Source of the DNA: Diplonema japonicum | Lineage: Eukaryota > Protista > Euglenozoa: Diplonemea | NCBI GenBank assembly: GCA_964019335.1 | Contig: OZ025665.1 | Span: forward strand, 620,001 to 684,000 | DNA length: 64,000 nucleotides | Reading direction: 5' to 3' | Shown: positions 305-28,067 of the stretch, piece by piece | Layout of the letters: every line of letters starts with the position of its first letter | Position numbering within the stretch: the first letter of the stretch is position 1 | Notes under the pieces: generated by a model | Told to the model about the DNA's origin: nothing | The model's input: the letters and a program-made list of their open reading frames with translations, nothing else | Database searches by the model: none | Position numbers and translations under genes: made by a program

Positions 305-1786
305 TCACAAAGCTTTGTTTGCGAGGTACTGCCTAATCATGTAAAGGGTTTCACGGGGCTTGTAGCGAGGCGCCATGTGGCCGGCCCCACGTACGGTGGC
401 GAAGGTGAAGTTGTTGGTAGTGTAAGTAGTGACGTACCCAGTGTACGGGATGGTACCAGGAGCGTTCCAAGGGTGCCAGTTGTCAGCGACAGTAAGGTTC
501 ATGGAGTCGATCCAGCGCTGCGTGCCAACGTAAGGTACGCACGGGTCAGAGTCCCCGGAGTACTGAAGAATCCTGAAGTTCTTGATAAGAGTGGCCCTGT
601 ATGTATCCACAAGTGAGTCCTCGCTGTGCGTGTAGTAGAGAGGTTGGAAGAAGTTGAACGAGGTCTTGCCAATGAGCTTCACATGCAGAGCATCCTGTAC
701 CTCTTTGACGTTCAGCCACACATTGGTCGCGCGTTCCTGTCCACAAGCATACTCACCAGAGTTCAGGTCATATGCAGAACGAAGCCCTTTCCTTTGCAAC
801 GCAGTCTCCCTGTCGGGTGCGTCCTTCGAACCCTTACCGTTCAGCGCCATGAGGTCTGGCTGGCAGTTGTCATACAAGAAGTAACCCCCGCCCATGTTAT
901 AGGTGTCGCCTGCTTCCCACATCACAGGGCGGATCGGATCACCAAGGAGCGATTTGCACGGTTCAGGCGGGGCTTCAAATGTTCCCCAATGCCCTTTACA
1001 AGCTTCATTAATCTTCTTGTAGGTAGCATCCTTGATCATCCCATGCCCGAAGAGGAAATCGACAGATGTCTTGGTCCCGATCCAGCCACTGTATGGCGTG
1101 CAGGTTTCAACCTTGTTCCCCGGACAGTCGTTGCCCAGGGCGAAGCCTTTAAGGGACCACGGGGCGGTGTTCCTGTTCGCATCGGTACGGTGCGAGAGGA
1201 TCTGCAAAGCAGCGGTGGGGATGAGAACCCCGGCATAGCTTTCCCCAACCATGAAGAACTCGTTCGACGCAAGCTCGGGGTACGCCTTGAAGAAGTTCAC
1301 CATAAAGTTGTAGTTCACAACCGCCTGTGTTGAGTCGGTCCATGTACAGTTTTCTGTGCAGTACGAGAAGCCTGTCGGTGCAGGGTGCTCTACGTATAAG
1401 ACGTTCGCAGGAACAGTGTGCCAGCTGTTAGGGTTCAGGAAGACAGTAGGAATGCCCGACTTGGCGTACTCTTCGGTGTTGAACGAATCGTCATTCAACG
1501 TCAGCGGGCCGTGTTCTGTGAAGAGGCCCATCAGTGAGCTAGAGCCGGGGCCGCCGTTGTTCCACAGAATTGTCGGGGCCTTTGGGTCTTTGGCGCTGTT
1601 CTCCACCAGATAGTAGTGGAAGAAAGCGTCACCTCCAGCGGGGACCTCCGCCTTAATGTACCCGCTCCAGTGTCTAGTCGGTAGCTCCCCTTGCAGCCCC
1701 GGAACATTCGTCACCCTGTCGCCAGGAACCTCACCCATGGCGCACCCCACCGCACACCCGAACAGCAGTAGCGCTGTCTTTTTCAT
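305..1786 (-). CDS. Serine carboxypeptidase (peptidase S10), secreted/lysosomal
   Basis: Signal peptide MKKTALLLFGCAVG (ATG 1786, after an A-run); motifs WNNGGPGSSS, GESYAG, YSGDSD, GAGHMAP. Confidence 0.93.
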   Translation of the reverse strand: MKKTALLLFGCAVGCAMGEVPGDRVTNVPGLQGELPTRHWSGYIKAEVPAGGDAFFHYYLVENSAKDPKAPTILWNNGGPGSSSLMGLFTEHGPLTLNDDSFNTEEYAKSGIPTVFLNPNSWHTVPANVLYVEHPAPTGFSYCTENCTWTDSTQAVVNYNFMVNFFKAYPELASNEFFMVGESYAGVLIPTAALQILSHRTDANRNTAPWSLKGFALGNDCPGNKVETCTPYSGWIGTKTSVDFLFGHGMIKDATYKKINEACKGHWGTFEAPPEPCKSLLGDPIRPVMWEAGDTYNMGGGYFLYDNCQPDLMALNGKGSKDAPDRETALQRKGLRSAYDLNSGEYACGQERATNVWLNVKEVQDALHVKLIGKTSFNFFQPLYYTHSEDSLVDTYRATLIKNFRILQYSGDSDPCVPYVGTQRWIDSMNLTVADNWHPWNAPGTIPYTGYVTTYTTNNFTFATVRGAGHMAPRYKPRETLYMIRQYLANKAL

Positions 1787-2031
1787 TTTTTTTTTTTTGT
1801 TCTTCGACCTCCCTCCTCCTGTGTTTGCGTGATGTTTTGAAAAGTATTCAAAAAAAAATTTTTTTTTTTGCAATAAACATACAACGAGGGGTGGGGGGAC
1901 AGGGGGGGCAAGACCATTTTTCATGGACACTTGAAAGAGAAGATCAAACAAAAGGAAGCTGGTTTTAACGATTAGAAGAAACGAAGAAGGAAAAAAGAAA
2001 AAAAAAAAAGATTAGAGCAAGAGAAACGAAA

Positions 2032-5000
2032 CTAACTCAGCTCGCCCGTACCGCTTGCCAAAGGGTTGGTGCCCGACGGTGTGGTCTCGGTGTCCGACAG
2101 AGACGACGGTTCAGGGACCGTTCGGGAAGGGGTAGATAAAAATCTGGGCGGAGGGGTGTTGGTGCTTGAGAAGAATAGGGTGTGGTAAGCCTTCGTGAAC
2201 TCCACCTCGTCCAGATACCCATCACCATCCTCATCGAACGAACGGAATGCCGCATCGATCGCCTGAGGCTCTGTGGAGACGGAGGGATACGTCCGAGCAG
2301 CATTGCGGAGCAGGGTTGCAAACCCATCTTTCGCAACACCCATCTGCAAACCTTCATCGAGCTCAACCAGTGCTTTGTAGTCATTCTGGATCATCTCTGA
2401 CTCACGCGCGGTGACACCAAACCCTTGAAGCCAGCATTTTGCCGCCGCTTCCCTCGCCGTTTGGGAGAACAGCCGCAGCAGCTCATCAAACCCAATCACA
2501 CCTTTATTTTCAATATCGAGCTCAACCATAAATTTCCGCAAGGCTTCTTCTGTCGGTGGGTGTTCGTACAGTACTGAGTACAACTGCGCGCATGCCACGC
2601 CTGACAAATCTCCTTTCGCGTTTTTTTCAAGCAGCTGGTAATGTTGCCGGACGGCCTCGATGCCGTCGGGGGTCAGCCCGTCGCGCATTTTCTTCCGTCG
2701 CTGGGCGCGTCGGGCGAACGGGACGCAGAATTCCGTGAAACTGATGACACCGGAGCTGTTCTTCAAGGTCTTTGTGGTGAAGTCTTGAACTTCTTGAACG
2801 GTTCCAGGCACACCGTGATAACATTGGTACATCGAGTAGAACTCCTTATCTGTCGTTAGGACAGAGTCGTTACCGGTGTTGACAATGCTGAACTCCCTTC
2901 GGAGAGCCTGGACCTCGGTGTCGCCCAACACGGACCGGACAAGCCCTGCTCGTTCCTGTTTTAGATTCTTGTAGGGCTTCGCAAAATCTTCAAATGAGAC
3001 CCTTCCGGTTCTCGAAGGGTCCATGACCCCGACAAACCAGTCTAGCTCCTCCTCAACAGGGGTTCTACAGAACAACACGAAAAACCATTCCCGAAACTGT
3101 TGTCGGGAGGTGAGCACACCGGTATTTCTGTCGAGTTTTTTAAACTCCCTTCGTAGGTATGAAACTTCACCCGGGACAATGCTTCCTGCGATCTGCGGGT
3201 CGGCTAGTAACATCTTCCTGCAGCCCGGTCTAGCAGGAGCTGAAGAGTATCTATGGTCAAAGGGTTGGTACACCGCAACAAACTCCTCGAACGAGATTTT
3301 CCCGTCGCCGTCAACATCGATGGCGCTTTTAGCGGTTTCTATGTCGGTGTCAGTTGGGGCTTCACCCAAGGCGATCTCCCAGAATAGCATAGCTTCGTCT
3401 TTGTCAAGAGCGCCGCTTCCATCTTTGTCGGCTTTGTTGAACTCGATTCGCAACGCTGCGATCTCTTCGTCGGTCAACGGGGTGGATTGCACCATTCCTT
3501 CTTCATCATCGGACTCGTCCAAATCAAGTGTTGAGAGGCCGAGAAGACGATGTCTTCTTCTTCTTTGCATTTCCGTTCGCTTTGTTAACACTGCCATCAC
3601 GATTGTTAAAAGCCCTGCCACAACAGCGAGTAAGACCACCGTGACGGCGAGAAGAACGCCTCCCGCGGGTTTGAAATTTCTATCGATAAAAGTTTCCAGT
3701 TTTGTATAGCACGAGTCGGGATATCTGTTGGACAATTCGCAGTTTTTCGGGCAGAACGACGGTAGTGAGGCACCGCCTCCTAGCGACGAACAAGATTGAA
3801 GAAACCCACTGCAATGAGCATACGCTTGGAACGCACATACATCTGACGGATTGTCGTCCACAGCAGAGTCCCACTCTGACGACAAATCACCCCTTAACGA
3901 TGGGGAATCGATGTTCCTTGCTGTCCACAACAAAAGACAACCAAGAAGAAGCGTTCCAATGCTTAGAACCATCGTCAGCATGCTGCATATAAGTATCCAG
4001 GGAACAACACGCAGAACTATAGAAGCCAAGAGAAACAAGGACAGCAACATTACAAACCCGGACAGAACGATCCACCCGAGCATAAGACTCTTCCCGAATA
4101 TCTTCGACTGCTCGTAGTAGTAAAACCCCACTGTAACGGAACAGATGCTTCCGATCATAACGACGGCCGTGGAGGCGGTCAGGAACTTTTGCAAGGTTTG
4201 CATGTTGTCGGACAGTATAACAACCTCAAGGATTTTTCGTTTTCTCCACCTCAATACGAACCCGGCAGCGCAGGCGATTGTGAAGACACCAGCACAGAGG
4301 ATGATGCCGCCTACAAGCAAGGTATACCCCCATGTCACACCAACAGAATCTTTTTGAGACGTGTCGATTGTTTTCAATGTGATTTTATTGGCGTTTGAAC
4401 AGTTTCTTGATGTGATCGGGTCTTCACAGACCGAGCAGTGCGGAGGGTCCTGCCACCCTGGACCCGCGCAGATTTTGGTCGCGCAGTTGATCGGTTTATC
4501 AAGAACCCTTCTGATGGTAAATGTTGACTTTGATTTCATGTTTTCTGTTTTCTCCAACACCATGGGTGTCAGATCGTCCACAGTAACCGTCACAACATGT
4601 TCGCCGAGAACAGGAAAATCGCTTCCGCTCACATCGTAGTAAGGTTGTGATATTTCATCAGGGGTGTTGATTTTTCTGCTGGTGGGTGCGTTCCACGTGA
4701 CACTTACATCGCTGTTCTCAACGAAATTAGACATCACTCGCAGCCGTACCGTGTCGGTTATGGTGAGATACACAACTTCGTAAGGCGGCGGGCAACGTTG
4801 TGCCGCAGTTTCAATCGGTTTCCGGTAAAGCGATTTCACCATGGCTTCCTTGCACACCGCACACATCCTTGGGTAAGACGTTCCCATGATACACGATTCG
4901 GAAGGTTTGTAGTAATTCGTGTAACCGCAGGGTTGAACAGGGTTCTTGTCGGCCAATCCAAGATCAGCCCATGCAACGAATTTTTTAGGGTCCGGCGAAC

Positions 5001-5850
5001 AGTTCGGGATGTTTAAATCCCTCGATTCTTCTACATTGTAAGAGTATTCATCTCCAAGCCCGCCGAAAGCGTGCCCCACCTCGTGGATCATCAACAATGG
5101 AAGGTCCTCACCATTGTACATAACTGCAACGCCTGTAGTGGTATTTCCAGGAGGACCAGGGTCACCTGTTCCACCATAAATATCGTCGTTGACGAGGACT
5201 ATGTATAAATCTGTCTGTGGTGCGTAGGAGCCCACTGTTAAAACGGTTGCCCAGTCGCATTGTAGCATTTTGACTTCGGGTGTGCCGTACCGGCATTGAA
5301 GATTGTTTGAGGTTGATTTGGGAAAAGCGCCTGATTCCGTGCTTTCTTCAAACAAACTGTACAGGTTTAAGGACGGGAAGTATCTCGGCCACGGTGCGGC
5401 GTCAAGATGTAGAGAATCCGGGTTTGAATTTTGCAGCGTTCGCCAGGCACGTGCCACGTCATTGTTGAAAAGCGTTTCTTCGTTCTTTGTGTAGCCGGAC
5501 GAGATGAATGTAATGGTAATATGACGCTCAACACTGCCCACTTCTTGAAGGGTTTTTAGTTTAGGTGTTGATTCTTGTTGAATTGACGATTGACGGGGTG
5601 GGGGTAGGATGGAGCCGTTGAGGTGTAGGTGTTCCCCTTCTGGTAGCCATGCTGGGAGGTATCGGTCGGTTCTTGCTGGTCGCAGGTTGTATGTTGAGGT
5701 TTGTTGTGCTTGTGTCATGCAGTTTGATCTGGGCACCCTTCGCTGTTTTACGATAGCTTTTTCTACGGTGTCCACCAATGCCCATACACATCCCTTTTCT
5801 GAGGGAATTTCATGGGATGAAAGTAACAATACTACGATCAGTGTAATCAT
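2032..5850 (-). CDS. Multidomain membrane protein: M64 (IgA-peptidase-like) zinc metalloprotease + TM + tetraspanin-like 4TM module + multiple EF-hands
   Basis: 1272-aa ORF; signal peptide; ISSGYT, HEVGHAFGGLGDEY, SCIM..MCAVCKE; five hydrophobic helices with a Cys-rich loop (FQAYAHCSGF...SCYTKL); EF loops DKDGSGALDKDE, DVDGDGKISFEE, DPSRTGRVSFED, DIENKGVIGFDE, DEDGDGYLDEVE. Confidence 0.8.
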   Translation of the reverse strand: MITLIVVLLLSSHEIPSEKGCVWALVDTVEKAIVKQRRVPRSNCMTQAQQTSTYNLRPARTDRYLPAWLPEGEHLHLNGSILPPPRQSSIQQESTPKLKTLQEVGSVERHITITFISSGYTKNEETLFNNDVARAWRTLQNSNPDSLHLDAAPWPRYFPSLNLYSLFEESTESGAFPKSTSNNLQCRYGTPEVKMLQCDWATVLTVGSYAPQTDLYIVLVNDDIYGGTGDPGPPGNTTTGVAVMYNGEDLPLLMIHEVGHAFGGLGDEYSYNVEESRDLNIPNCSPDPKKFVAWADLGLADKNPVQPCGYTNYYKPSESCIMGTSYPRMCAVCKEAMVKSLYRKPIETAAQRCPPPYEVVYLTITDTVRLRVMSNFVENSDVSVTWNAPTSRKINTPDEISQPYYDVSGSDFPVLGEHVVTVTVDDLTPMVLEKTENMKSKSTFTIRRVLDKPINCATKICAGPGWQDPPHCSVCEDPITSRNCSNANKITLKTIDTSQKDSVGVTWGYTLLVGGIILCAGVFTIACAAGFVLRWRKRKILEVVILSDNMQTLQKFLTASTAVVMIGSICSVTVGFYYYEQSKIFGKSLMLGWIVLSGFVMLLSLFLLASIVLRVVPWILICSMLTMVLSIGTLLLGCLLLWTARNIDSPSLRGDLSSEWDSAVDDNPSDVCAFQAYAHCSGFLQSCSSLGGGASLPSFCPKNCELSNRYPDSCYTKLETFIDRNFKPAGGVLLAVTVVLLAVVAGLLTIVMAVLTKRTEMQRRRRHRLLGLSTLDLDESDDEEGMVQSTPLTDEEIAALRIEFNKADKDGSGALDKDEAMLFWEIALGEAPTDTDIETAKSAIDVDGDGKISFEEFVAVYQPFDHRYSSAPARPGCRKMLLADPQIAGSIVPGEVSYLRREFKKLDRNTGVLTSRQQFREWFFVLFCRTPVEEELDWFVGVMDPSRTGRVSFEDFAKPYKNLKQERAGLVRSVLGDTEVQALRREFSIVNTGNDSVLTTDKEFYSMYQCYHGVPGTVQEVQDFTTKTLKNSSGVISFTEFCVPFARRAQRRKKMRDGLTPDGIEAVRQHYQLLEKNAKGDLSGVACAQLYSVLYEHPPTEEALRKFMVELDIENKGVIGFDELLRLFSQTAREAAAKCWLQGFGVTARESEMIQNDYKALVELDEGLQMGVAKDGFATLLRNAARTYPSVSTEPQAIDAAFRSFDEDGDGYLDEVEFTKAYHTLFFSSTNTPPPRFLSTPSRTVPEPSSLSDTETTPSGTNPLASGTGELS

Positions 5851-7910
5851 TTTTTTTTCTTTTTTTTACATTACAGTTTCGTTGCCCTCCTGAGGTTTAT
5901 GTTTTTCCCCCCCCCCCCTCCAATTTTTTTGACGGAAAAAAAAAAAGAGAAAAATAAAGGAAGGGAAAAGAAGAAAAAAAAAATGGAAACGTGATAGAGT
6001 AAAAAGAAAGGGAGAAAAAAAAATAAAAAGAGAGGGAATAAGGGAAAAGAAGAAATAAAAAATATATATAAAAAAAAAGCTCAAAAGGAGGGGGAAAAAA
6101 AAATTCCCAGTCGTTTGAGGTATAAAAAAGTATAAAAAGAGAAGGGTGTGTGTTTAAAATATTTGTGAATTGTAGTAGGTGAAAGCATCCAAGCCTATGT
6201 TCCCCCCCCCCCCCCCCCCCCCTGCTCCCCTGACTGCTGAAGGACGTATTTCTACATTTTCAAATCTACATTTTCCATGAAGAGCAGTGGGGTTGGGGGG
6301 GGGGGGGGGGGAGTCTTGGATTTCGTTCAAGCCAGAATTCTTTTTTTTTTACCCAAAGAAGTTATACTTGGTTACTTGGGCAACCAAAGAGTGAAGGAGT
6401 GAAAAAAAAAAAAAAAAAAGAAGCCAGTATAAAAAGAATAAATCATCAGGTTTTTGTTCTCTCTTTTTTTTAATTTTTTTTTTAAGTGCTTGCGTTCTAT
6501 TTGGTCTATTGGCATCGAAAGGCAATATGAAGTTTGCATGACAGCAAAAAGAATTTTTTTTTTCCTGCCTTCGATTTGGTTTACCGTATCCTTCTCCTCA
6601 GAGAATCAAAATTCAAAATATTCCTTTTTTTTTAAAAGTTGTTAAATAATCAAAGGTCTTGACTTTAAAAACTTAATTTCCTTTTTCAAAATACGGCAGT
6701 TTTTTTCTTTCTTTTACTTCTTTCTTATTTTTATTTTTTTTTTTCCAGAAAAAAAAGAACAAAGGAGGGGGGGTATAAAAAAGGGGGATGCTTTTAATAT
6801 GGAAGTACAAAAAAAAAAGAGGAAATCACTAAAGGAGAGAAAATAAAAATAAAGGGGGAAATATAAAAAAAAAAAAAAAGAAAGGGGGGAAAAATAGTTT
6901 TTCCCCCATTGTTAAAAAAAAGAAATTTTTAAAATCTTAGTTGTAAGAGGGAGCAGGTGGAGAAGCAAAATAAAATAAAAAAAAAAAAAAAAAAAGAAGA
7001 AACCATTGGGTCTTCAAGAAGTACGAACTTTAAGCGTTTTTTTTTTTTCCTCTTTTTTTTTTCTTTTGATTATACTAGCAAGTGTTTTTCATCATAAAAA
7101 AAAACAAGTTGTTATGTATAGGTTTTTCTTTCTCTTTTTTTTCCCTCTTTTTTTTTCTTCTCCAATTGAAAAGGGGAGAAGAAGAAGAAGAAGAAGAGAA
7201 GAAAAAAAAAAAAAAAACAAAAACAAAAAAACGAAGAAGCCTTTACCATCACGGGCACCGAGGACACCGTGTCCTTAAGAAATTCATGACTTCCCCTCGG
7301 CCTTCTTTAAAATGTTATGTTTCACACCTTTCTGTCAAAGAGGGGCCTTGCTGTTCGGGAAGGGAGGGGGGAGTAATGGGATTCTAAAACACTTTTTTTT
7401 AAAAGGTGTTTCCCCCACATTTTTTTTTTTTTTTCCTGTTTCTTTCTAGGAACGTAAAGGTATAAAGATACAAAAAAAAAAGAAGAAAAAAAAAAGGGCT
7501 AATCATTAGCACCCTTTTTTCCCTTTTTTTTTCCCCTCCCCCTCTCTTTAAAGCCAATGCCCGAACCTGACCCACTCATAGTGATTTACACCTTATATTC
7601 TCTAAAACCAGTTATTGCCAGAAAAAATCGTTTTTTTTTTCTTTTTTTTTCTTTTTCTTTTTTCCCTCTCTCTGAATGATTTAAAATGCTATCCTAAATG
7701 AAAAGCCAAGGTTTTTTTTTTTTTCAAAAAAGATTTTTATTTATTTTTTTTTCATTTAGATTTTGTGGGTTTAGAGATATGGGGTGTTAAAGAACTTCAC
7801 TCTGATGGGGAGGGGGGGGGGCAAAAAGAAAAATTGTATTTTTTTTCCCCCACTCTTCTGAAATTGCTCCACGGCTACGGACAATATGGTATTCTTTTTG
7901 GGGGGAATAG

Positions 7911-7945
<35 letters not shown>

Positions 7946-8481
7946 AAAGGTCAATCCACCAGTTCATGCATTTGAACGGGGTACGCAAAAGAAAGCATGT
8001 ATAATTATAAGAAAAAGAAAGAAGAGGCTGATTAGAATAAAAAAAAGCCGTTCCATCCCTACCTGAACCTCTCATTTACGAGACTTTTTTTCCTTGCCGA
8101 CATTTTTTTTTTTTTTTTTTTTAAAGGATAAGCCTATGTGTCAAAAAAAAAAAAAAAAAAAAAAAAAAAACATTAATTTGGTGCGGGAGGGCAGGTTTTT
8201 CAGAGGGCATCAAGGAAGGGTGAGGGAAGAACTGCGTTTAGATATGCAACTACTTTCTTTTTAATACAAAAAAAAAAGTTCACCCACACCAAAATAAAAA
8301 AGGGGGGGTAGTAATTCATCCAGTTCCTAGTACCTTACAAAAAGACGAATAAAACAGATGAAAGCTTCTGCATTCTTTTATGGGTACTAAGTGAATTACC
8401 CCCCCCCCCCGAGAAAAAACAACTACAGTCACCCTTTTTTTTTCTCTTTTTTTTTCTACGTTCATCCTGAGATTAAACTAG
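5851..8481. repeat. Low-complexity intergenic region rich in A/T/G/C homopolymers
   Basis: Numerous 10-30 nt mononucleotide runs; ORFs are only poly-K/F/P/G. Confidence 0.85.
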
Positions 8482-8681
8482 NNNNNNNNNNNNNNNNNNN
8501 NNNNNNNNNNNNNNNNNNNNNNNNNNNNNNNNNNNNNNNNNNNNNNNNNNNNNNNNNNNNNNNNNNNNNNNNNNNNNNNNNNNNNNNNNNNNNNNNNNNN
8601 NNNNNNNNNNNNNNNNNNNNNNNNNNNNNNNNNNNNNNNNNNNNNNNNNNNNNNNNNNNNNNNNNNNNNNNNNNNNNNNNN
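8482..8681. other. Assembly gap (200 N)
   Basis: Run of N. Confidence 1.
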
Positions 8682-8831
8682 CGACGCTCCACTATGTGTA
8701 TTTTCTTTTTCTTTTTTTTAAAAAAAAAAAGGAAAACATACATTGGTGTCATAAGAGCTCCTCTGCTATAAAGAGAAACATGTTCAGACATCTGTTGGGG
8801 TTCGTCGGTGTCCTCACGGTTCAATAACGTA

Positions 8832-12746: not shown

Positions 12747-15700
12747 TCACCAAAAATAACATAAGACTGTCGCGAGCACGACAAGAAGGCAACGCACGGC
12801 TAAGCCCTGCGGCTCACATACAGAACCCATCGATATGGGAGACAAGTACGACCCGGGAGGGAAGATAGGGGTAAAGTACTCAGAAGGAGCAGGGGTCGGC
12901 TGCTGGGTGAGAACAGGAGCAAAAGAAGAAATAAACGCCGTATCCGGATTCAAGGAGTACGCACGCCGCAAGGGCGAAGCAGGGTCTGAAATAGCCGCAC
13001 GACAAGCTGAAAAAATATCATTTGACAAGAAAGTATCCGTGGGGCTAGGCACAATAACGGAAAACTCCACCACCGTAGAGCAACCCGAAGCTTGGCAATC
13101 TTCAACGGAAAGAACAGATGCATCCCTAACGGTCAGATCCCGGCATATAGAAGGGGTTTGTCTATCTGTTTCGGTCAACCCCTCAGCTAACTTTGATATT
13201 GGTTTCGAGCACAAATAAACCAACACCACGTCTTTCAGATCGCTGGGATACTTAGCGTACCCTTTGAGAGAGTCCAGCAGAACCATTTCCATCTTTGTCT
13301 TCTCCGTCTCGTCAAACCCAAACGCCTCCAGGTACCCCATGTCCAATACAATACTGGGCTGTGTTGGTGTTGTAATGTTATCCCGCATCCCCAACCCAGG
13401 GGCGACATTTGGTATGTTTTCCATTACTTGAAAGACAGTCGTCTTTAAGAACAGAGTTCTCGGCACGCCGAGGATTTCACATTTGAAGCTCAGGACGGCT
13501 TTGGAGCAGGAACCATAAAACGCTATTTTTGTGAATCTCGAGAAGCCTTGTACAGCAGTTGACGTGTTCCATCCGTCAGGGGTGTTGACTTGACTTCCGG
13601 ACACACCGCCTAGCTTGCCGACTCTGAACTGGACGAACCCTTCCAAGCACTCTCCAGACACGGTCACGGTGCTGAAGTCATCGCCCTGCAGTGCCATGTT
13701 GTCAGAATCGCGAATTGATATTAATAAATCTAACGCGGTATTGCTCAGCACCGTTGCTTCGATGGCAGCTTCTTCAAGTTGGAGGTGGTGTGCCTCTTGC
13801 ATTATCAACCCGAAGTCGTGTTGGAACTCCTCTGTGACGAGCCTTGCCTTCACAAACCCAAGCCTTGCCCCCATGTAAACCGTCGTGCGGGTGATCCCAA
13901 CTCCGTTTTGTATCATCGTTGTGCGGTTCTGTGGGATTTGCGACAAGCACCCCACCCTCTGCACCCCCAGCTTTGCTGTCACCCATGTGAGTACCCCATT
14001 GTACACGGTGCTGTGAGTTGCATTGGTGGCTTGGAGTAGCATTCGCACCACCTTCGATCCGTACACCACCTCCACTTCGTCTCCTACCTTTGGTTCTTCT
14101 GAACACGAGAACCAATGTGTTGTCTTGCACTGTGGTATGGTGTTGTTGCTGCACGGCATGGTGTCATGCCCCCTCCATGTCTGGTTGCCTTGCAACGGCG
14201 GCATGCATGAGGTTGCCAGCCACCTATGATCCTTGTCCGTCTCCATGCATGATATCTCGTAAGGGTCGAAGGACACTTCCCCGTTGTACGAGACGATGGC
14301 ACGTTCGGGGGAATCGTCTGTGACTTGAATCTTGAACTGCATCCACAGCCCTGTCGCCCAGTGCGTTGAGGGTGTCACGTCGCGCCAAGGAAACTCTTCA
14401 ACTCCCAAGAACGGGACCATCCTGTACTGCACCCGCACGTTTGCGATGCCAGGGACAACATGCAAAGGTGGGAGCCGCACTGCCATGCCGCCCTCGACGC
14501 TGACCGTCACTTCCCACGGAACGGAATCCGTGCTCTGCTTGGGTTTGAAGTAGACAACCCCTGTCCCTCTCGCCACCGTAACGAACTCTTTCACAAAAAC
14601 ACCCAACCTCACCGCCTGCAGTTTGACAACAGTCTGGAAATCTCCGTAGGCCACGCTGCCCTCAGCAGTCAGCATCGCCACCTGTACCCCCACAACCCTC
14701 CCCACCACGGCTGTAGCAACACTCGTGCTCGCTTCGAGTCCTGTGTAGTTCACAGGAGGACTGTTTGGGTCCAGCGATTGCGGGAGTACCTTCAAGCTGA
14801 CAGGTTCAGTCCCTGTCACCTTCAGGGAGCCCGGCAGCAGCGTGCTCGACGGGATCACAGGCAACCCGAAGCGCTGGAGTCCAACGATCTCGCAGGGCAG
14901 CTGAGCGAAGCTGCCATTCATCACGATGACAGTGCCGTACTGGTTGAGGTGGTTGTTGTGCGGTGTCCAGCAGTCCTGCGGTATTGACGCGAACCCTGCG
15001 TCCTCCAGTCCCAGGCTCGGCCAGGTGACCAAACCTCCTATGTTAGACTCGTCGTACTGCTGCGTGTATGCACGGAGGATAACCTGTGCAAACCGATGGA
15101 GTCGTGACACGGCAGTCTTCCTGAGCGTGGACGGGGAGCCTGTGATGAGCAGCGTGGGAGATGTCGAGAAGACCCACGTATGCCGCTCCGACAGGAACAC
15201 GTGGAAGACTAGTGTTCTGGGTGTGAAGTTATCGTGTTGAAGCAACGCAGTGCAAGTACCTGTGCGCTCGCGCAGGCCGTTCACCAGTACATTAAATACA
15301 GCAAGACTGCCAGTAAATTGCACCACCTGATCATCGACGACGCAGCCTTTGCAGGTACTGCAGTCGAAGGTGATGTTGAGGTTGGCCGTTCCATATCCAG
15401 CACGGTGTGTTGTGAGGCCACCCAGTGCATCTACCACCTCCCCGATAGCGTAGACAGGCACGCTGATGGGGATCTCGGGGAAGATGTTGTACGGTTCGGA
15501 GTCCTGCACCTCCATGTCGGTGGCCTCGATGACGCGCGAGATAACAGGCGGCAAGCCCCCCTTCCCCCACTGTTTCGTTGGCAGCACGGTCCCGTCCGAC
15601 AGCGTGAACTGCAGCTCGTAGGAGCTCATGACCATACCCGACACAGTTACCCTGACCACCCCAGGAGGGGTGCCCTCCCCGCAGAGGGCACCATGAGGAA

Positions 15701-18700
15701 TTCCATTCACAAAACACGTGCCTTCCACGTGAATCACAGGGTCCTCTTTTGGGATGTCCGACCGCCACGTGATGACAGTGGTACTAGGGGGTTTGTTTAG
15801 TGAGAGCGAGACATTCTGGATTACAGGAGGGTTCGGATGCCACGACAAGGGGGTGGGGCCACCCAGCGAGAACGAGCGGTCTCCTGTGTCGTCAGCTGCG
15901 TACACCGTGAAGGTGAAGGTGGAGGTGTCGTTGCAGCAGTCTTGTTGGAGAGGGGTGTGTGGGAGGGCAACGAGCTGTGTGGGCAGCGACAGGATGGCTA
16001 CCTTGTGTGTGTACGTTGCGAACTTGACGAGGCACTCGTAGCAGCTGCGCGATGCCTGCAGCTTGACCATCGCGACGCCATTGTCGGCAAGAGCTGAGCC
16101 GTTCGAGATAGGCGACATTAGCGTCCACACCCCACCACCGCCGTTGCCACCCTCCACTTCGGGAATGCTCACTTCAGCCCAGACATTTCCCTCCTCGTCC
16201 CATGCTGACTGGTGGTTCATGTCCACACGCCACGCTGTCAACGAAAAGGGTCTCCGTTTTGTCACGGACGGCAGCGGGACACCTGCTAGCAGCCACTTCA
16301 CTCCACATGTTGTGACCCTGTACCGCAGCACTGCTCCTGCTTGGTCGCGCAATGGAAACATCTGCGTGGCACCGTTCATGACAGAGTGCACCCACACTTC
16401 GCACCCGTCGCAAGGCCGCACAAACATAAACCCAGTTTCTTTTCCCACCTCCAGCGCGACACCGAACTTGCTGGCGTGGTCGAACTCCGTAGGGTGGATG
16501 CTGCACGACCCGCTTGTGCCCTTCAGCATCGAGAGGAAAGCGCCGTTGCCATATTTAGCTTTAGAAGAAACGAACTCCGTCATCCCAGCCCATTTGTTCA
16601 CAATGTATGCCTTGTAGTTGGCACTAACAGGGAAGGCCCATGAGTTCATCTGCACAACAGTCTTGACTCGCACCGTGAAAGGGTCACCAACCTGAATAAT
16701 GGACCCCGACGGGAGCAGCTGCTCGGATACGACAACAGACGATGCACTGCCTACCTCGACTGTGAAGGGTTTCGTGACAAACGTGCGGTCAGCAGGTGAG
16801 GGCCCGTTCGGCAGCGCTGCTTCAGGAAGACACGTCCCCTCATTGACAGCACCTGGCGCACAGAGCTGAAATTTCAAAACACACGCCTGGCAAGGCTCGG
16901 AGAAAACACCCCACACTGAAGCAACACCCCCTTCAAGCACAGCTGATGAGACTGGTTTGAAGGAGCTCAAGGAGTCGATGGTACCCTTAGGAACCTGCAG
17001 GGAGAAGACACCACCTGTGCCGCATCCATGTGTAGGCTGAATCACGCTTACCAAGACAATGGAACGTGTGTATGCCCATGCTCTACCACCGTTGGCAGGT
17101 TCGATGTATATCTGGATAGGAAAGGGGATGTTTTGCAGCGCCTGTGAATAGTAGACACCCCTACCAGCGTCGGGGGAGATAGTGAGGTACCCATTGCTGT
17201 TGGTGTTCATGCCGACGGTCATGGGGCACTCTGAGAAGTCGGTGATGACGTCGCTTACGCGCAGCCCCACGTACTCGAGGGAGGGGTACCGCGTGGAGTA
17301 CTCCCTGCCCGTCGTGGCGGGGAGCAGAGCCGCCCCATTCACAGTGCCCTCTAGAGAGAAGGATGCGTAGTCCACTTCATTTAAAATAGAAAACGTGAAG
17401 CGGATCCCAAACTCAGACACCAGCGTGTTGCTCTTTGTGATTGTCTTCATGGCCTCATTAGCGGTGGCATCCACGAGGGTCGTCTGTCCGCCGTTGTGGT
17501 AGAGAGTCATGGAGGCGTCCGTATCATATTCTAGATAGTGGGTGTCCCCTAGGGTGAAGTAAACCACGCCCCAAACGACAACGATGGACACCTCACGGCC
17601 ACATGAGTAGTGAGCAACGAGCCCCCCTGGGTTGAGCACCACGTTGGACTCTGTCAAACCGGTGGCCATTGTCGCGGCGACGCTGTAGATACCCACTTGG
17701 TACTGCGGTGTGGGGTGCCGCACCCACAGGCGGACAGTAACACACCCCGGTGAGACCACCTCCTCGGCAGTGCCCGACGAGACCGCGCAGATTTCAATCG
17801 AAGCATCTCGCACAGGTCTGGGGTCGGTTACATCTAAGAATATAATACCTCTCCCGTCCCTTGCAGTGTGCGACGCGTTTATATACCTTGTGAATTTCAC
17901 AGGGCCATACGACCCGTAGGTGTAATTTTTCTTCACACCCGAGTCATCTGTACCGTGCTTGTCCTCATACATGGGCTTCAACACATACCCTGTAGACGTT
18001 GTGCAGAGCCCAGTGTCCGTGACCCCCTCGCAAACGTACTGAGGCAGGTTTCCGTTGACACGCACTGAAATGTTGTAATGTCTGTAGTCACGCACGACCA
18101 CTGAGGATGTGGTGTTCCAGAACAGTACCTCAAACTCCAACCTATTTGCGGTGGTCTGTACTAACCATTCTTGGCAGTTGCAGCTACTTGCTGTGCAGGG
18201 ACACAGAGCAGTACCCCCTGTCACAGAGGCGACTGTCAAAGAAGAGACGTTAGTGATAATGACGGGGTTGAGGCCGAGAGGTGTCGCACAGGTGTAAACG
18301 ATGGAGGTGCTGTCTTGAGCAAAGGCGAGGACGCGGAAGGTAACGTCAATAGTAGTGAGGATCTTCGGGGGGTTTTGACCGGTGGCAATCAGGTTGAAGA
18401 CGGCAGTGCTTCCATCAGCTGTGCTTTGCATCTGCGTGGAGGCTGTAACCATGCTGGGGCTCCCTACCACCTCGAGCCTGTACGATGGGTTGCTAACCCC
18501 GTCCACCAGGTCGACGAGTACCCACCACTCAGGCCACACAGTGTTCTGCCCAGATGCCGACTTCGGCCACACAGACACTTGGAAGGCATCACTTTTGAGG
18601 GTGTCGTCCTTCCAGTCGATGCTCTGCAGGGACACGTCACAGCCCACACCCACCGTCCCGTCCATGAAAGTGACTGTAATGCGTCCGAAGACGCCCGATG

Positions 18701-25211: not shown

Positions 25212-25244
25212 TGTTACATTTTTTTTTAAAGTGCACAGATCTAC

Positions 25245-25282
25245 CTGGAAGGTTGTTGAAGGGGGAAAAAGAAGAAAAGAAG
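25245..25282 (-). promoter_or_regulatory. Putative trans-splice acceptor (pyrimidine tract + AG at 25246-25245) for the giant surface protein gene
   Basis: Sense-strand T/C-rich tract, then caacaaccttccAG, 33 nt upstream of ATG. Confidence 0.45.
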
Positions 25283-25305
25283 AACGGCAACGATACTGTA
25301 ACTTT

Positions 25306-26724
25306 CTATTCAAATTGGGTCTTTCGTTCCCAGACGTCCCCGTTGTCCCACACAATCTGCGAGGAGGACGTCTTCACAAGCTTCACCCCGAGCAGGGTTA
25401 CCCTCCCGTCGGTTTTCGTTAGTGAATAGGCTTCCTTGTAATTAAGGTAGCGCACACGTGTGGTGTCGAGGAAGACTAAGTCGCCGCTGGGGATGGTGTA
25501 GGTACCGGCGAGCTTCTTGAGCTCCGGGTAGGGGTTGGGGGGGGTAATAGGGGTGCAGCAGTGCACGGGGAACCACCCCGTGGGTTCGTATTTCCCACCG
25601 ACTTCTTGTTTTCGCCCGTAGAGCCAGAGCTTGCGGAAGCGCGACACAACAAGAACGTCCCCAGGAACTATCGACAGCCGCGGCTCGTCAGGCGCCGGAC
25701 ACGACCAGACCGCACGCCACCCAAGGAACCAGCATTGTGGGGCGCAGCATAGACACCAGGAATACCAGTTTCCATTGAACTTCTTGTCAGCTTTGTACTG
25801 TTTCGTAACTTGTGTTTTCTCCGCCTTCTGCGACAACTGTTCCATCGGAAGGTCAAATTGCGTAGCAACCGGCGTGTCCAGCTCCCAATAGACAGTATAA
25901 GGAAGCACCACAGGGAGGAGCTTCAAGTACCCACCGAAAACAATGTCAAAATTCTTCCTGAAACCCAAATCATACGGGAAGTGAAAAGGGTAAGGATCGG
26001 CATGGGTACGCCCTCGTCGAGACTCTGCCTTGTCTATGATGTACTCCTCTATTTGAGTGGTGTTTGAACGTATGGTGTCGCACTGCTGTTTGAGCAGCAT
26101 GCCGACGGCAGCTACAAGCGCGAGGGACATGGCGAAGCACCAGCACCCGATAATGGTGTGGTAGATACCGTGGGAGAGCTTTGCACTGAGGATCCGTGTC
26201 ACGAAAGGGAACAATAAGTACGCGGTGTGGCTGCAACCTATCGGGACGTAGAACACAAAGAGGGTGAAGGCTCGATGATTCGTCGCATGCACGCAATTGT
26301 TTATCCAAGGGCAGTGGTGGTCCATCTTGCTGACGCAAACCCCGCATTGTGTGCAGTGATGCGCTCTCGGGGGTTTGTAACTATCGCACAACCTGCAATG
26401 CTGCAGCACGTCAGATGGTTCGACGACCGCATTCTTCTCGTTGAACATCTTCCTAAGTTCCTCACCTCCATGTTTGTACAACTCTTCCTTAGACGGGTTA
26501 AAGGTGTGTCGCCTCGGGACGGTGTACACAGCCACCAGGTAGCTCCATAGCAGCATCACAAGCTCTATGCAAAGCACCACCTTCACACCCCAACCACACT
26601 CCCCAAACAGCTCCAGCACAAAGACATAATACACCACCGCGCTGAAGATTCCGAACACCAAACAGAAGGTTGTCAACACACCCCAATGCAACAATCGCCG
26701 AATAGCCCACAGAACCTTGTTCAT
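25306..26724 (-). CDS. DHHC palmitoyltransferase with C-terminal SH3-like domain (ZDHHC6-like architecture)
   Basis: CRLCDSYKPPRAHHCTQCGVCVSKMDHHCPWINNCV; 4 TM; TTQIE, PYDLG; SH3-like LSIVPGDVLVV...WLYG...GWFP. Confidence 0.93.
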   Translation of the reverse strand: MNKVLWAIRRLLHWGVLTTFCLVFGIFSAVVYYVFVLELFGECGWGVKVVLCIELVMLLWSYLVAVYTVPRRHTFNPSKEELYKHGGEELRKMFNEKNAVVEPSDVLQHCRLCDSYKPPRAHHCTQCGVCVSKMDHHCPWINNCVHATNHRAFTLFVFYVPIGCSHTAYLLFPFVTRILSAKLSHGIYHTIIGCWCFAMSLALVAAVGMLLKQQCDTIRSNTTQIEEYIIDKAESRRGRTHADPYPFHFPYDLGFRKNFDIVFGGYLKLLPVVLPYTVYWELDTPVATQFDLPMEQLSQKAEKTQVTKQYKADKKFNGNWYSWCLCCAPQCWFLGWRAVWSCPAPDEPRLSIVPGDVLVVSRFRKLWLYGRKQEVGGKYEPTGWFPVHCCTPITPPNPYPELKKLAGTYTIPSGDLVFLDTTRVRYLNYKEAYSLTKTDGRVTLLGVKLVKTSSSQIVWDNGDVWERKTQFE

Positions 26725-28010: not shown

Positions 28011-28067
28011 TTTCCCCCTCTTTTTTTTTCCCTCTTCTCTTTCTTCTCTCAAGGGGGGGGGGGGGGG

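What the first reader, a model, noticed from the sequence alone, without database searches (positions are those of the whole stretch)
2032..5850. M64 metalloprotease - tetraspanin - multi-EF-hand fusion: candidate Ca2+-coupled surface protease or receptor
Seen: signal peptide; intact HEVGH..GLGDEY zinc motif; a Cys-rich linker; one TM helix; then a 4-TM block with a tetraspanin-like large loop (CSG where tetraspanins have CCG); then roughly five EF-hand pairs, some canonical and some degenerate. Established: M64 peptidases are best known as soluble bacterial enzymes, and tetraspanins normally partner proteases (e.g. ADAM10) as separate proteins. Inference: five TMs place the protease outside and the EF-hands in the cytosol, giving a one-chain protease/scaffold/Ca2+ sensor. 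I know of no description of this architecture.
Basis: partly seen in the sequence, partly recalled or inferred. Interest (0 to 1): 0.82.

Follow-up and report, generated by a model that had tools for sequence, protein, structure and literature searches.

The report
Protease-tetraspanin-calcium sensor fusion, euglenozoan family
One gene encodes a membrane protein with a zinc protease outside the cell, a tetraspanin-type four-helix anchor and calcium-binding modules inside; it is real, but it belongs to a large unstudied family found across euglenozoan protists and is not a one-off.

Summary
Window 2032-5850 (minus strand) is one uninterrupted 1272-aa ORF. Pfam finds Peptidase_M64, Tetraspanin and five EF-hand pairs, all above curated cut-offs for the whole protein.

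- **Protease:** every igalysin/M64 hallmark is present. These are HExxHxxxGxxD, then Glu-Tyr, a C-I-M Met-turn and a CxxC.
- **Membrane block:** a profile of it hits tetraspanins in the PDB (CD9 3e-11). The family's invariant CSG aligns on their CCG.
- **Topology:** hydropathy and charge put the protease outside and the EF-hands in the cytosol.

The claim of uniqueness does not hold.
- An exhaustive search found 1361 relatives. Among the best 40 cluster representatives, 35 carry Tetraspanin and 21 carry EF-hands.
- All 12 representatives with an organism name are Euglenozoa: diplonemids, a kinetoplastid, a euglenid and trypanosomatids.
- This genome has seven M64 genes, six fused to a tetraspanin.
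- The scan's first readers flagged two such fusions elsewhere in this genome.

I found no paper describing the architecture.

My best reading is a catalytically competent ecto-metzincin fixed to its own tetraspanin scaffold, with cytosolic Ca2+ sensing. Ca2+ coupling to proteolysis is inferred, not shown.

The parts
2032..5850 (-). Whole gene: 1272-aa ORF plus stop codon
   Evidence: The open frame extends only 5 codons above the ATG. There is no polypyrimidine run of 10 nt or more inside it.
5791..5850 (-). Residues 1-20, probable signal peptide (short h-region ITLIVVLLL)
   Evidence: Aligns with the signal-peptide-like N-termini of P0002, P0003 and P0004. No dedicated predictor was run.
4816..5553 (-). 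Residues 100-345, M64 (igalysin) metzincin catalytic domain
   Evidence: Pfam PF09471 at 62.9 bits. All 6 PDB hits are M64 proteins, E 3.1e-6 to 1.2e-4. It is 44-59% identical to five orthologues.
5044..5085 (-). Residues 256-269, HEVGHAFGGLGDEY: catalytic zinc motif HExxHxxxGxxD, followed by Glu268 and Tyr269
   Evidence: The motif definition comes from passages of PMC12237041 and PMC12402451. It aligns to HEFGHGLLGLGDEYS of 9ekk_A.
4852..4893 (-). Residues 320-333, CIMGTSYPRMCAVC: Met-turn (C-I-M) and CxxC. With Glu268 these match the ligands of the igalysin structural zinc site.
   Evidence: Aligns to CIMRDTNYQFCEVC of 9ekk_A. C320, M322, C330 and C333 are invariant in 40 of 40 family rows.
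4351..4815 (-). Residues 346-500, family-specific stalk: a probable beta-rich module, then a Cys-rich stretch (C456, C461, C472, C475, C484)
   Evidence: Conserved within the family: C475 and C484 are invariant and C456 is at least 90% conserved. Nothing significant in PDB or Pfam; the best hit is HYR at E 0.054.
4252..4326 (-). Residues 509-533, extra transmembrane helix TM0, followed by RWRKRK
   Evidence: Hydropathy and charge count. It is present in the family alignments.
3580..4185 (-). Residues 556-757, tetraspanin-type four-helix block (TM1-TM4)
   Evidence: Pfam PF00335 at 37.9 bits against a cut-off of 32.1. The genome-wide scan gives 43.4 bits. The A6 profile hits CD9, CD53 and CD81 at 3.3e-11 to 3.7e-9.
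3661..3921 (-). Residues 644-730, large extracellular loop with six Cys and CSG at 680-682
   Evidence: W660, C680, S681, G682, C687, C700 and C714 are invariant in 57 of 57 rows. CSG aligns on the CCG of CD9, CD53 and CD81.
3241..3495 (-). Residues 786-870, EF-hand pair 1 (loops 808-819 and 845-856, both canonical)
   Evidence: EF-hand_7 at E 9.5e-14, 51.9 bits. The loops are conserved in orthologues.
2947..3213 (-). Residues 880-968, EF-hand pair 2 (loop 907 degenerate; loop 944-955 canonical in this protein only)
   Evidence: EF-hand_7 at E 4.6e-5, 24.1 bits, below the 30-bit cut-off. Loop table.
2701..2937 (-). Residues 972-1050, EF-hand pair 3 (both loops degenerate)
   Evidence: EF-hand_7 at E 2.3e-5, 25.1 bits, below the cut-off. 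Loop table.
2446..2688 (-). Residues 1055-1135, EF-hand pair 4 (loop 1075 degenerate; loop 1112-1123 DIENKGVIGFDE is half-canonical)
   Evidence: EF-hand_7 at E 5.4e-5, 23.9 bits, below the cut-off. The second loop is canonical in P0161 and P0159.
2161..2433 (-). Residues 1140-1230, EF-hand pair 5 (loop 1165 degenerate; loop 1206-1217 canonical)
   Evidence: EF-hand_1 at E 1.3e-6, 28 bits, above its 25.4-bit cut-off; EF-hand_7 at E 1.6e-5. Loop table.

Best explanation
**Shown**
- The gene encodes one multi-pass membrane protein, in this order:
  - a signal peptide;
  - an igalysin (M64) metzincin domain with every catalytic and structural residue in place;
  - a family-specific stalk with a Cys-rich end;
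  - one extra membrane helix (TM0);
  - a tetraspanin-type four-helix block of a lineage-specific 'CSG' subtype;
  - a cytosolic tail of five EF-hand pairs, in which four of ten loops look able to bind Ca2+.
- It is one orthologue group within a large euglenozoan family. That family's common core is M64 + stalk + TM0 + tetraspanin, usually followed by one EF-hand pair directly after TM4.

**Inferred**
- The protease faces the outside, or the topologically equivalent lumen of a vesicle or pocket. It is held at a fixed height and orientation by its own tetraspanin. This would be a one-chain counterpart of the two-chain ADAM10-TspanC8 'scissor'.
- Ca2+ binding to EF1, EF2 and EF10 changes the tail. 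The degenerate hands would act as structural partners. The change then alters the tetraspanin block's conformation, its clustering or its trafficking.
- Cleavage of surface or cargo proteins would therefore follow cytosolic Ca2+ signals.
- M64 enzymes studied so far cut next to proline, so Pro-rich surface proteins are plausible substrates.
For: **Architecture and residues**
- Pfam hits, hydropathy and motifs.
- Zinc motif, Glu-Tyr, Met-turn and CxxC match the igalysin description in PMC12237041 and PMC12402451. They align residue for residue with IgA protease 9ekk_A.
- These residues are kept in all five closer orthologues and in P0160.

**Tetraspanin relationship**
- All 4 PDB rows with E below 1e-8 are tetraspanins.
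- CSG aligns on CCG, CP on the conserved CP, and the last Cys lies before TM4.

**One mRNA**
- Complete single Trinity ORFs of Lacrimia, Hemistasia, Namystynia, Artemidia, Papus and Ploeotia carry the modules.
- There is no internal polypyrimidine tract.

**Selection on the tail**
- The EF tail is 42-51% identical between orthologues. The catalytic domain is 44-59% identical and the TM block 31-39%.

**Fusion as the rule**
- 6 of 7 M64 genes in this genome are fused to a tetraspanin.
- In two trees, one branch puts all 110 TM-bearing rows plus 12 others on one side. The short bacterial-type M64 rows lie on the other (FastTree support 98, IQ-TREE SH-aLRT 93).

**Link between catalysis and Ca2+ sites**
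- Among 97 rows with tails of at least 90 aa: 60 have both an intact motif and a canonical EF loop, 19 have neither, 13 have the motif only and 5 have EF only.
Against: - There is no experiment of any kind. I have no localisation, activity or Ca2+-binding data for any member.
- No 3-D model could be made (structure prediction closed). Contacts between stalk and large loop, and between tail and TM block, are untested.
- The catalysis/EF association is not significant once relatedness is allowed for. There are 6-7 independent pairs; the EF state goes the same way in 2-4 and the other way in 0, median p 0.125.
- Whole subfamilies lack part of the arrangement:
  - the trypanosomatid members have lost HExxH and recognisable EF-hands;
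  - paralogues on C5 and C20 end right after TM4.
  So neither proteolysis nor Ca2+ sensing is essential to the family core.
- Six of the ten EF loops here are degenerate.
- The signal peptide is weak.
- The canonical CCG is absent.
Confidence: 0.5

Rival explanations
1. It is a digestive or trafficking protease of endomembranes. The protein would live mainly in food vacuoles, lysosomes, multivesicular bodies or the flagellar pocket or feeding apparatus. The M64 domain would face the lumen. The tetraspanin block would act as a sorting or vesicle-budding module, and the EF-hands would couple Ca2+ to vesicle fusion rather than to proteolysis itself.
For: - The topology is identical for the lumen and the outside.
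- A secreted-type S10 serine carboxypeptidase gene lies directly downstream on the same strand.
- The family has many paralogues with varied cytosolic adaptor domains: PDZ in 4 of 40 and WW in 1 of 40. That fits sorting or scaffolding.
- Tetraspanins are classic markers of extracellular vesicles (titles and abstracts listed).
Against: - No sorting motif or localisation was tested.
- The stalk, Cys-rich end and TM0 sit in a fixed register next to the tetraspanin and are conserved. That fits positioning of a membrane-proximal active site at least as well.
- Gene adjacency in same-strand euglenozoan clusters is not evidence of shared function (established knowledge of polycistronic units).
Confidence: 0.25
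2. It is a receptor or adhesion scaffold in which the M64 fold mainly binds a ligand. Signalling would run outside-in to the EF-hand tail and its partners. Proteolysis would be dispensable or vestigial.
For: - 25 of 110 TM-bearing rows lack the relaxed zinc motif (85 of 110 keep it).
- All four named trypanosomatid members lack it. PMC12402451 notes this for 11 Trypanosomatidae entries (section 7 read).
- Those proteins keep the stalk, TM0 and tetraspanin block.
Against: - In this gene and all five closer orthologues, every catalytic and structural residue is kept.
- The catalytic domain is the best conserved part of the protein, at 44-59%.
- All seven M64 genes of this genome keep HExxH...DEY.
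Confidence: 0.2
3. It is an artefact: two or three neighbouring genes read as one ORF, or a mis-assembly.
For: There is no transcript of this gene itself. The assembly has an N-run about 2.6 kb upstream.
Against: - It is one uninterrupted frame.
- The colinear architecture recurs in independent transcriptomes and genomes.
- Linkers are conserved, for example the polybasic/acidic stretch and PLTxEEI after TM4.
- There is no internal polypyrimidine tract.
- Five further fused paralogues sit on other contigs.
Confidence: 0.02

Closest known systems
Igalysins / MEROPS M64: Thomasclavelia ramosa IgA protease (IgAse, ThomasA; PDB 9EKK, 9QDH, 9I4Z, 9QA6) and the Bacteroides lipoproteins 3P1V and 4DF9 (BF3526)
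   Same: - The same zinc motif HExxHxxxGxxD with Asp as third ligand, then Glu and Tyr.
- The same Met-turn beginning with Cys, and the same CxxC.
- Pfam PF09471 is above its cut-off.

   Different: - The bacterial enzymes are secreted, wall-anchored or lipoproteins. Their accessory domains are lectin-like, wrapping or beta domains.
- Here the domain is followed by an unrelated stalk, five membrane helices and EF-hands.
- Sequence similarity is confined to the catalytic domain: query 6-245 of 706.
Tetraspanins CD9, CD53, CD81 (PDB 6K4J, 6WVG, 5TCX)
   Same: - Four helices with a small and a large outer loop.
- Pfam PF00335 is above its cut-off.
- Profile hits of 3e-11 to 4e-9 align TM2 to TM4, the CxG motif, the CP motif and the last loop Cys.
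   Different: - CSG replaces CCG, and this is invariant in 57 of 57 family rows. It also occurs in a free 206-aa tetraspanin of this genome.
- There are six loop Cys in a different spacing.
- The N-terminus is not cytosolic. It continues through TM0 into a 500-residue ectodomain.
- The C-terminal tail is about 515 residues rather than a few.
ADAM10-TspanC8 'molecular scissors' (review PMC8268256 and preprint 10.1101/2022.10.22.513345; only the search listing and the start of each abstract were seen)
   Same: - A membrane-anchored metzincin works together with a tetraspanin.
- The order protease, Cys-rich stalk, TM helix resembles ADAM10.
- This is a 'works like' comparison only.
   Different: - Two chains there, one chain here.
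- The protease there is an adamalysin (M12B) with a disintegrin domain; here it is M64.
- TspanC8 has eight loop Cys and CCG; here there are six and CSG.
- ADAM10-TspanC8 has no built-in EF-hands.
- The match of the A6 profile to Tspan15 (8esv_B) is weak, E 0.69.
Trypanosomatid 'IgA Peptidase M64, putative' or 'Peptidase M64' proteins: Angomonas deanei CAD2214964.1, Trypanosoma melophagium XP_067185569.1, T. rangeli ESL09957.1, Strigomonas culicis EPY18820.1. PMC12402451 notes a cluster (CL-X) of 11 Trypanosomatidae M64 entries without catalytic residues; that these named proteins belong to it is my inference.
   Same: - They are homologous over M64, stalk, TM0 and the tetraspanin block in one stretch (query 17/18-672/675 of 706 for P0030 and P0038, 12-662 for P0041).
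- They have CSG and five TM segments.
   Different: - No HExxH and no canonical EF loops.
- No Pfam EF-hand reaches its cut-off. Only EF-hand_15 appears, at E 0.038, in 1 of 4.
- Pfam Tetraspanin is below its cut-off in 2 of 4 (17-24 bits) and unlisted in the other 2. That may explain why the fusion has gone unremarked.
- They are about 950-1015 aa long.
Diplonema papillatum KAJ9469326.1, named 'Caltractin' in NCBI (P0027)
   Same: M64 + Tetraspanin (67.2 bits) + an EF-hand pair in one 1504-aa protein.
   Different: - It is a paralogue group at 29% identity.
- It has one EF-hand pair plus a WW domain, not five EF-hand pairs.
- The database name reflects only the EF-hands.
EF-hand-regulated membrane enzymes such as NOX5 and DUOX
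   Same: Cytosolic EF-hands in the same chain as a multi-pass membrane enzyme, giving Ca2+ control. This is a 'works like' comparison only.
   Different: The fold, chemistry and side of the membrane are unrelated. No homology is claimed.

Membership tests
Peptidase M64 / igalysin (metzincin clan) | Match to Pfam PF09471 above the curated cut-off | tested here: met
   62.9 bits against a cut-off of 26. 51.2 bits in the genome scan.
Peptidase M64 / igalysin (metzincin clan) | Zinc motif HExxHxxxGxxD, with an extra residue before Gly and Asp as third ligand | tested here: met
   H256, E257, H260, G264 and D267. The definition comes from PMC12237041 and PMC12402451.
Peptidase M64 / igalysin (metzincin clan) | Family-specific Glu and the 'Tyr switch' directly after the third ligand; a Met-turn starting with Cys; two Cys in the C-terminal helix (structural zinc site) | tested here: met
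   E268, Y269, C320-I-M322, C330 and C333. They align to the same residues of 9ekk_A. E268, C320, M322, C330 and C333 are invariant in 40 of 40 rows.
Peptidase M64 / igalysin (metzincin clan) | Metzincin fold and peptidase activity | not testable with these tools
There is no assay.
Tetraspanin (Pfam PF00335) | Match to the family profile above the curated cut-off | tested here: met
   37.9 bits against 32.1, covering profile positions 4-218 of 225. 35 of 40 relatives match, best E 4.4e-21.
Tetraspanin (Pfam PF00335) | Four membrane helices with a small first and a large second outer loop | tested here: met
   Hydropathy gives 556-577, 588-611, 616-643 and 731-755, with loops of about 10 and about 87 residues. 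This is a crude window method, not a dedicated predictor.
Tetraspanin (Pfam PF00335) | CCG motif in the large loop | tested here: not met
   CSG at 680-682, invariant in 57 of 57 rows. It aligns exactly on the CCG of CD9, CD53 and CD81. I therefore file the block as a tetraspanin-type domain of a divergent 'CSG' subtype, not as a canonical tetraspanin.
Tetraspanin (Pfam PF00335) | Further conserved loop cysteines (the Cys-Pro motif and a Cys shortly before TM4) | tested here: met
   C700-P701 and C714 align to the corresponding residues of CD9 and CD53. They are invariant or at least 90% conserved.
Tetraspanin (Pfam PF00335) | Both termini cytosolic and short | tested here: not met
   An extra helix TM0 carries the N-terminal 508 residues outside. 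The C-terminal tail is about 515 residues.
EF-hand | Paired helix-loop-helix units matching the EF-hand pair profile | tested here: met
   EF-hand_7 at 123.3 bits in 5 stretches. Each of five segments alone hits at E 9.5e-14 to 5.4e-5; segments 2-5 fall below the 30-bit cut-off individually.
EF-hand | 12-residue loop with oxygen ligands at positions 1, 3, 5 and 12 (Ca2+-competent) | tested here: inconclusive
   Met by 4 of 10 loops (808, 845, 944, 1206). One loop (1112) is half-canonical and 5 are degenerate. Actual Ca2+ binding is untested.
ADAM10-TspanC8 scissor complex | Adamalysin (M12B) protease with a disintegrin domain, and a TspanC8 tetraspanin with eight loop Cys | tested here: not met
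   No adamalysin or disintegrin family appears in the Pfam list at E up to 1. There are six loop Cys. The comparison is functional only.

The most novel reading that the evidence does not exclude
Euglenozoa hard-wired the protease-tetraspanin partnership into a single polypeptide before their main lineages split, and gave it its own Ca2+ sensor. If so, tetraspanin-guided, signal-regulated ectodomain cleavage is not an animal invention. It would be either an ancient eukaryotic principle or a striking convergence. The catalytically dead trypanosomatid members would be relics of a Ca2+-gated sheddase, now used as scaffolds or receptors on parasite membranes.
Probability: 0.3. Interest if true: 0.75.

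Novelty: new variant of a known kind. Interest (0 to 1): 0.58.

Why it matters
**For the tetraspanin field.** Tetraspanins are known as partners that place and tune membrane proteases. The evidence comes almost entirely from animals and from non-covalent complexes. A natural fusion would be independent evolutionary evidence that tetraspanin and metzincin functions belong together. This one is conserved across diplonemids, kinetoplastids and euglenids, and it accounts for six of the seven M64 genes in one genome.

**As a model.** It offers a simpler one-chain system for asking how a tetraspanin positions an active site.

**For Ca2+ signalling.** The built-in EF-hand array makes Ca2+ control of extracellular proteolysis directly testable.

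**For parasite annotation.** Trypanosomatid genomes carry proteins annotated 'IgA Peptidase M64, putative'. These are in fact tetraspanin-anchored pseudoproteases. Current domain annotation largely misses this, because Tetraspanin is sub-threshold in 2 of 4 and unlisted in 2 of 4.

**For marine biology.** Diplonemids are among the most abundant marine heterotrophs, and this is an expanded surface-protein family in them.

Tried and rejected
**Closed or failed tools**
2. I wanted look-alikes in the ESM Atlas. It did not hold the sequence and its reader was closed.

**Bacterial donor of the M64 domain**
4. This is not resolved.
- The search for related loci on A4 found no stretch conserved enough.
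- The word-index search with the ectodomain gave only 8 unnamed hits. Three carry PF18962, which I recall as the Bacteroidota type IX secretion sorting domain.

**Sensitivity of the searches**
5. The word-index homologue searches found only 4 and 9 proteins. The exhaustive phmmer search found 1361.

**The stalk (residues 340-500)**
6. No significant PDB or Pfam match. The best hits were an ATP synthase delta subunit at E 0.44 and HYR at E 0.054. I treat both as chance.

**Other 4-TM families**
7. I rejected these. The only non-tetraspanin PDB row was an antiporter subunit at E 1.

**Coupling of catalytic motif and EF loops**
8. The raw table is strong (60/13/5/19). The independent-pairs test is not significant, so I report it only as suggestive.

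**Method limits**
- Labels for the trees came from crude hydropathy and regular expressions.
- 3 rows with partial domains were dropped before both trees.
- 4 long or odd rows (P0172, P0165, P0115, P0140) were dropped before the IQ-TREE run.
- The set includes eight near-duplicate cluster members (P0151-P0158).

**Literature limits**
- Supplements of papers were not opened.
- Appendix Fig. S1 and the network tables of PMC12402451 might list the euglenozoan entries.

**Organism**
- I read it as a diplonemid. The best orthologues are diplonemid transcripts, and an SL-exon-like sequence on the minus strand near 30540-30590 resembles the diplonemid leader as I recall it.
- 'Hpha' = Hemistasia and 'Rhum' = Rhynchopus humris are my readings of name prefixes.

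Full report
**1. The observation**

Window 2032-5850 on the minus strand is a single ATG-initiated ORF of 1272 codons. The open frame reaches only five codons above the ATG.

All 17 ORFs of at least 300 aa other than two antisense overlaps lie on the minus strand. The 1.25 kb upstream is AT-rich and full of polypyrimidine tracts. This is the look of a same-strand euglenozoan gene cluster.

Pfam hits on the whole protein:

| Family | Bits | Cut-off | Residues |
|---|---|---|---|
| Peptidase_M64 | 62.9 | 26 | 101-288 |
| Tetraspanin | 37.9 (E 2e-9) | 32.1 | 556-744 (profile 4-218 of 225) |
| EF-hand_7 | 123.3 | 30 | five stretches |

NCBIfam added nothing above its cut-offs.

**2. Anatomy**

*Protease domain.*
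- The only HExxH is HEVGHAFGGLGDEY at 256-269.
- Two 2025 papers on the Thomasclavelia ramosa IgA protease define the M64/igalysin hallmarks (passages of PMC12237041 and PMC12402451):
  - the motif HExxHxxxGxxD, with Asp as third zinc ligand;
  - a following Glu that binds a second, structural zinc;
  - a Tyr 'switch';
  - a Met-turn C-I-M;
  - two Cys in the C-terminal helix.
- All are here: H256, E257, H260, G264, D267, E268, Y269, C320-I-M322, C330 and C333.
- They align directly on those residues of chain 9ekk_A. All 6 PDB rows in that search are M64 proteins (E 3.1e-6 to 1.2e-4).

*Membrane segments.*
- Hydropathy gives five segments: TM0 at about 509-533, then 556-577, 588-611, 616-643 and 731-755.
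- K+R counts are 6 after TM0 and 8 after TM4, against 2 in the short loop between TM1 and TM2.
- The 87-residue loop 644-730 holds six Cys. The ectodomain holds 15 Cys and four N-x-S/T sites. The 515-residue tail holds 6 Cys.
- This supports protease outside and tail inside.

*Tail.*
- It contains ten EF-hand-like units in five pairs. Each pair alone matches EF-hand_7 (E 9.5e-14 to 5.4e-5). Only the first exceeds the 30-bit cut-off by itself.
- Loops 808, 845, 944 and 1206 are canonical. Loop 1112 is half-canonical. Five loops are degenerate.

**3. Is the 4-TM block a tetraspanin?**

I built a 14-row profile of TM0 to TM4 (A6) and searched the PDB. Seven rows came back at E up to 10:

| Hit | E-value |
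|---|---|
| CD9 | 3.3e-11 |
| CD53 | 3.3e-10 |
| CD81 | 1.1e-9 |
| CD81 | 3.7e-9 |
| Tetraspanin-7 | 0.18 |
| Tetraspanin-15 | 0.69 |
| an antiporter subunit | 1 |

- In the three printed alignments the family's CSG lies on CCG, its CP on the tetraspanin CP, and its last loop Cys just before TM4.
- CSG is invariant in 57 of 57 rows.
- A free-standing 206-aa tetraspanin of the same genome (82.8 bits) also has CSG. CSG is therefore a lineage trait of these tetraspanins, not a decay of the fused copy.
- Because the canonical CCG is not met and the N-terminus is not cytosolic, I call the block a tetraspanin-type domain of a divergent subtype.

**4. One gene or several?**

- The CDS has no pyrimidine run of 10 nt or more. 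The 1250 nt upstream has 19.
- The same colinear protein is encoded by single assembled transcripts of:
  - Lacrimia lanifica (P0002, 'ORF type: complete');
  - an 'Hpha' transcriptome (P0004);
  - Namystynia, Artemidia, Papus and Ploeotia.
- No transcript of this gene itself was available.

**5. How widespread is it?**

- An exhaustive phmmer search with residues 95-800 found 1361 proteins at E up to 1e-3. Of these, 246 were at 1e-10 or better and 66 at 1e-30 or better. The search covered 1.84 billion cluster representatives.
- Many proteins of 1000-1500 aa match positions 5-675 of the query in one stretch.
- Pfam on the best 40:

| Family | Members matched (of 40) |
|---|---|
| Peptidase_M64 | 40 |
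| Tetraspanin | 35 |
| EF-hand_7 | 21 |
| PDZ_2 | 4 |
| WW | 1 |

- Of 174 rows with a full catalytic domain, 102 have CSG between TM segments and 8 more have at least three TM segments.
- I looked up 30 representatives. Twelve have an organism name or prefix, and all are Euglenozoa:
  - diplonemids: Lacrimia, 'Hpha', Namystynia, Artemidia twice, and Diplonema papillatum KAJ9469326.1 (named 'Caltractin');
  - the kinetoplastid Papus;
  - the euglenid Ploeotia;
  - trypanosomatids: T. rangeli, T. melophagium ('Peptidase M64'), Angomonas deanei ('IgA Peptidase M64, putative') and Strigomonas culicis.
- The other 18 come from unnamed metagenome or read-archive assemblies. Occurrence outside Euglenozoa is therefore not excluded.
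- The trypanosomatid members lack HExxH and canonical EF loops. Tetraspanin reaches only sub-threshold scores in 2 of 4 and is unlisted in the other 2.
- PMC12402451 mentions in one sentence 11 Trypanosomatidae M64 entries without catalytic residues. It says nothing of a tetraspanin (section 7 read in full).

**6. This genome**

The 62.5-Mb assembly has seven M64 loci.
- Six lie in the same open frame as a Tetraspanin match above the cut-off. They are on contigs C18 (this gene), C19, C83, C20, C5 and C72.
- The seventh (C4) is M64 + CUB without TM segments.
- Tails differ between paralogues:
  - C19 has one EF-hand pair;
  - C83 has a weak EF-hand and a PDZ domain;
  - C5 and C20 end just after TM4.
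- Only this gene has five EF-hand pairs.
- Two first-reader notes describe such fusions on other pieces of this genome.

**7. Orthologues and selection**

Five proteins share the five-pair tail: P0002, P0161, P0003, P0159 and P0004 (43-46% identity for the first four, 37% for P0004). Identity to the window protein by region:

| Region | Identity to the five orthologues |
|---|---|
| Catalytic domain | 44-59% |
| EF tail | 42-51% |
| Stalk | 32-42% |
| TM block | 31-39% |

- EF1, EF2 and EF10 are canonical in nearly all orthologues.
- The degenerate loops are conserved in their degenerate form.
- This speaks for a structured tail under constraint, not decaying repeats.

**8. Origin of the fusion**

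- Two trees of the catalytic domain each contain one branch with all 110 TM-bearing rows plus the same 12 rows without a tetraspanin block on one side. On the other side lie 52 (FastTree) or 48 (IQ-TREE) mostly 350-600-aa rows.
  - FastTree, 174 rows: support 98.
  - IQ-TREE quick, LG+G4, 170 rows: SH-aLRT 93.
- The 12 include fragments, single-TM forms and the C4 paralogue.
- This fits one origin of the fusion with later losses. The trees are unrooted, the methods quick and the labels crude.

**9. Mechanism**

*Shown:* a catalytically complete metzincin ectodomain, a tetraspanin-type anchor and Ca2+-type EF-hands in one chain.

*Inferred:*
- The tetraspanin positions the protease. This would be a one-chain analogue of ADAM10-TspanC8 (listing and the start of each abstract only).
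- Cytosolic Ca2+ acts through the tail on conformation, clustering or traffic.

*Suggestive but not significant:* among 97 rows with tails of at least 90 aa, an intact zinc motif and a canonical EF loop go together (60 both, 19 neither, 13 motif only, 5 EF only). Only 6-7 independent contrasts exist, with median p 0.125.

*Against a strict coupling:* pseudoprotease and tail-less subfamilies exist.

**10. Literature**

| Search | Result |
|---|---|
| tetraspanin + diplonemid | 0 papers |
| 'peptidase M64' + trypanosom | 0 papers |
| tetraspanin + Trypanosoma brucei + EF-hand + metalloprotease | 0 papers |
| 'IgA peptidase M64' | 3 papers held, 2 listed; one on Bacteroides, one on oomycetes |
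| tetraspanin / M64 / EF-hand | none of the 15 listed concerned this architecture |
| tetraspanin + kinetoplastid | none of the 15 listed concerned this architecture |
| tetraspanin / Euglenozoa / Diplonema / Euglena | none of the 15 listed held the term tetraspanin |

The D. papillatum genome paper does not mention M64, tetraspanin, EF-hand or peptidase in its main text. Subscription journals and supplements were not covered.

**11. Verdict**

It is one member of a large, database-visible but apparently undescribed euglenozoan family, not a singular invention. The function is unproven.

Noticed in passing
window 305-1951 (-): An S10 serine carboxypeptidase gene (Pfam Peptidase_S10, 305 bits) lies directly downstream of the M64 gene on the same strand. 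That makes two secretory-type peptidase genes side by side.
   Followed up: partly
window about 30540-30590 (-): A spliced-leader-exon-like sequence ends in ...CAGTTTCTGTACTTTATTG followed by GT. It is a solitary copy inside the gene cluster and resembles the diplonemid leader as I recall it. A first-reader note also flags it (s1-866420).
   Followed up: partly
window 26901-28052 (-) and 25306-26724 (-): A 383-aa multi-EF-hand protein and a DHHC palmitoyltransferase are adjacent on the same strand. Tetraspanins are typically palmitoylated (recalled), but I assume no link.
   Followed up: no
window 12747-25355 (-): A giant 4202-aa ORF. I did not examine it.
   Followed up: no
window about 8480-8770: A run of N (an assembly gap) appears as X in both ORF translations. 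Long G and C homopolymers at about 6200-6320 lie in the intergenic region upstream of the gene.
   Followed up: no
G000:C23:284325-284909 (L009): A free-standing 206-aa tetraspanin (82.8 bits) carries CSG rather than CCG, like the fused blocks. Another on C19 (L019) has CTG. Euglenozoan tetraspanins may generally lack CCG.
   Followed up: partly
G000:C58:219388-220116 (L010): A tetraspanin match (67.6 bits) is interrupted by one TAA and a lysine-run insertion just before its C-S-G / C-C-G region. This could be an intron or a broken gene.
   Followed up: no
G000:C4:430198-431271 (L005): This is the one M64 paralogue without membrane helices. It is an 863-aa protein with a signal-like N-terminus and M64 plus a CUB domain. 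It nests inside the fused clade in both trees.
   Followed up: partly
window 5290-5330 (-), residues about 175-177: Relative to P0002, P0003 and P0004, this protein lacks a loop of about 24 residues with two Cys in the catalytic domain (MPHG...C..GC.P in the others).
   Followed up: no
P0004 (Hemistasia-type orthologue) and G000:C83 paralogue (L003): PDZ domains are inserted at different places. In P0004 the PDZ sits in the ectodomain stalk. In the C83 paralogue it sits in the cytosolic tail.
   Followed up: no
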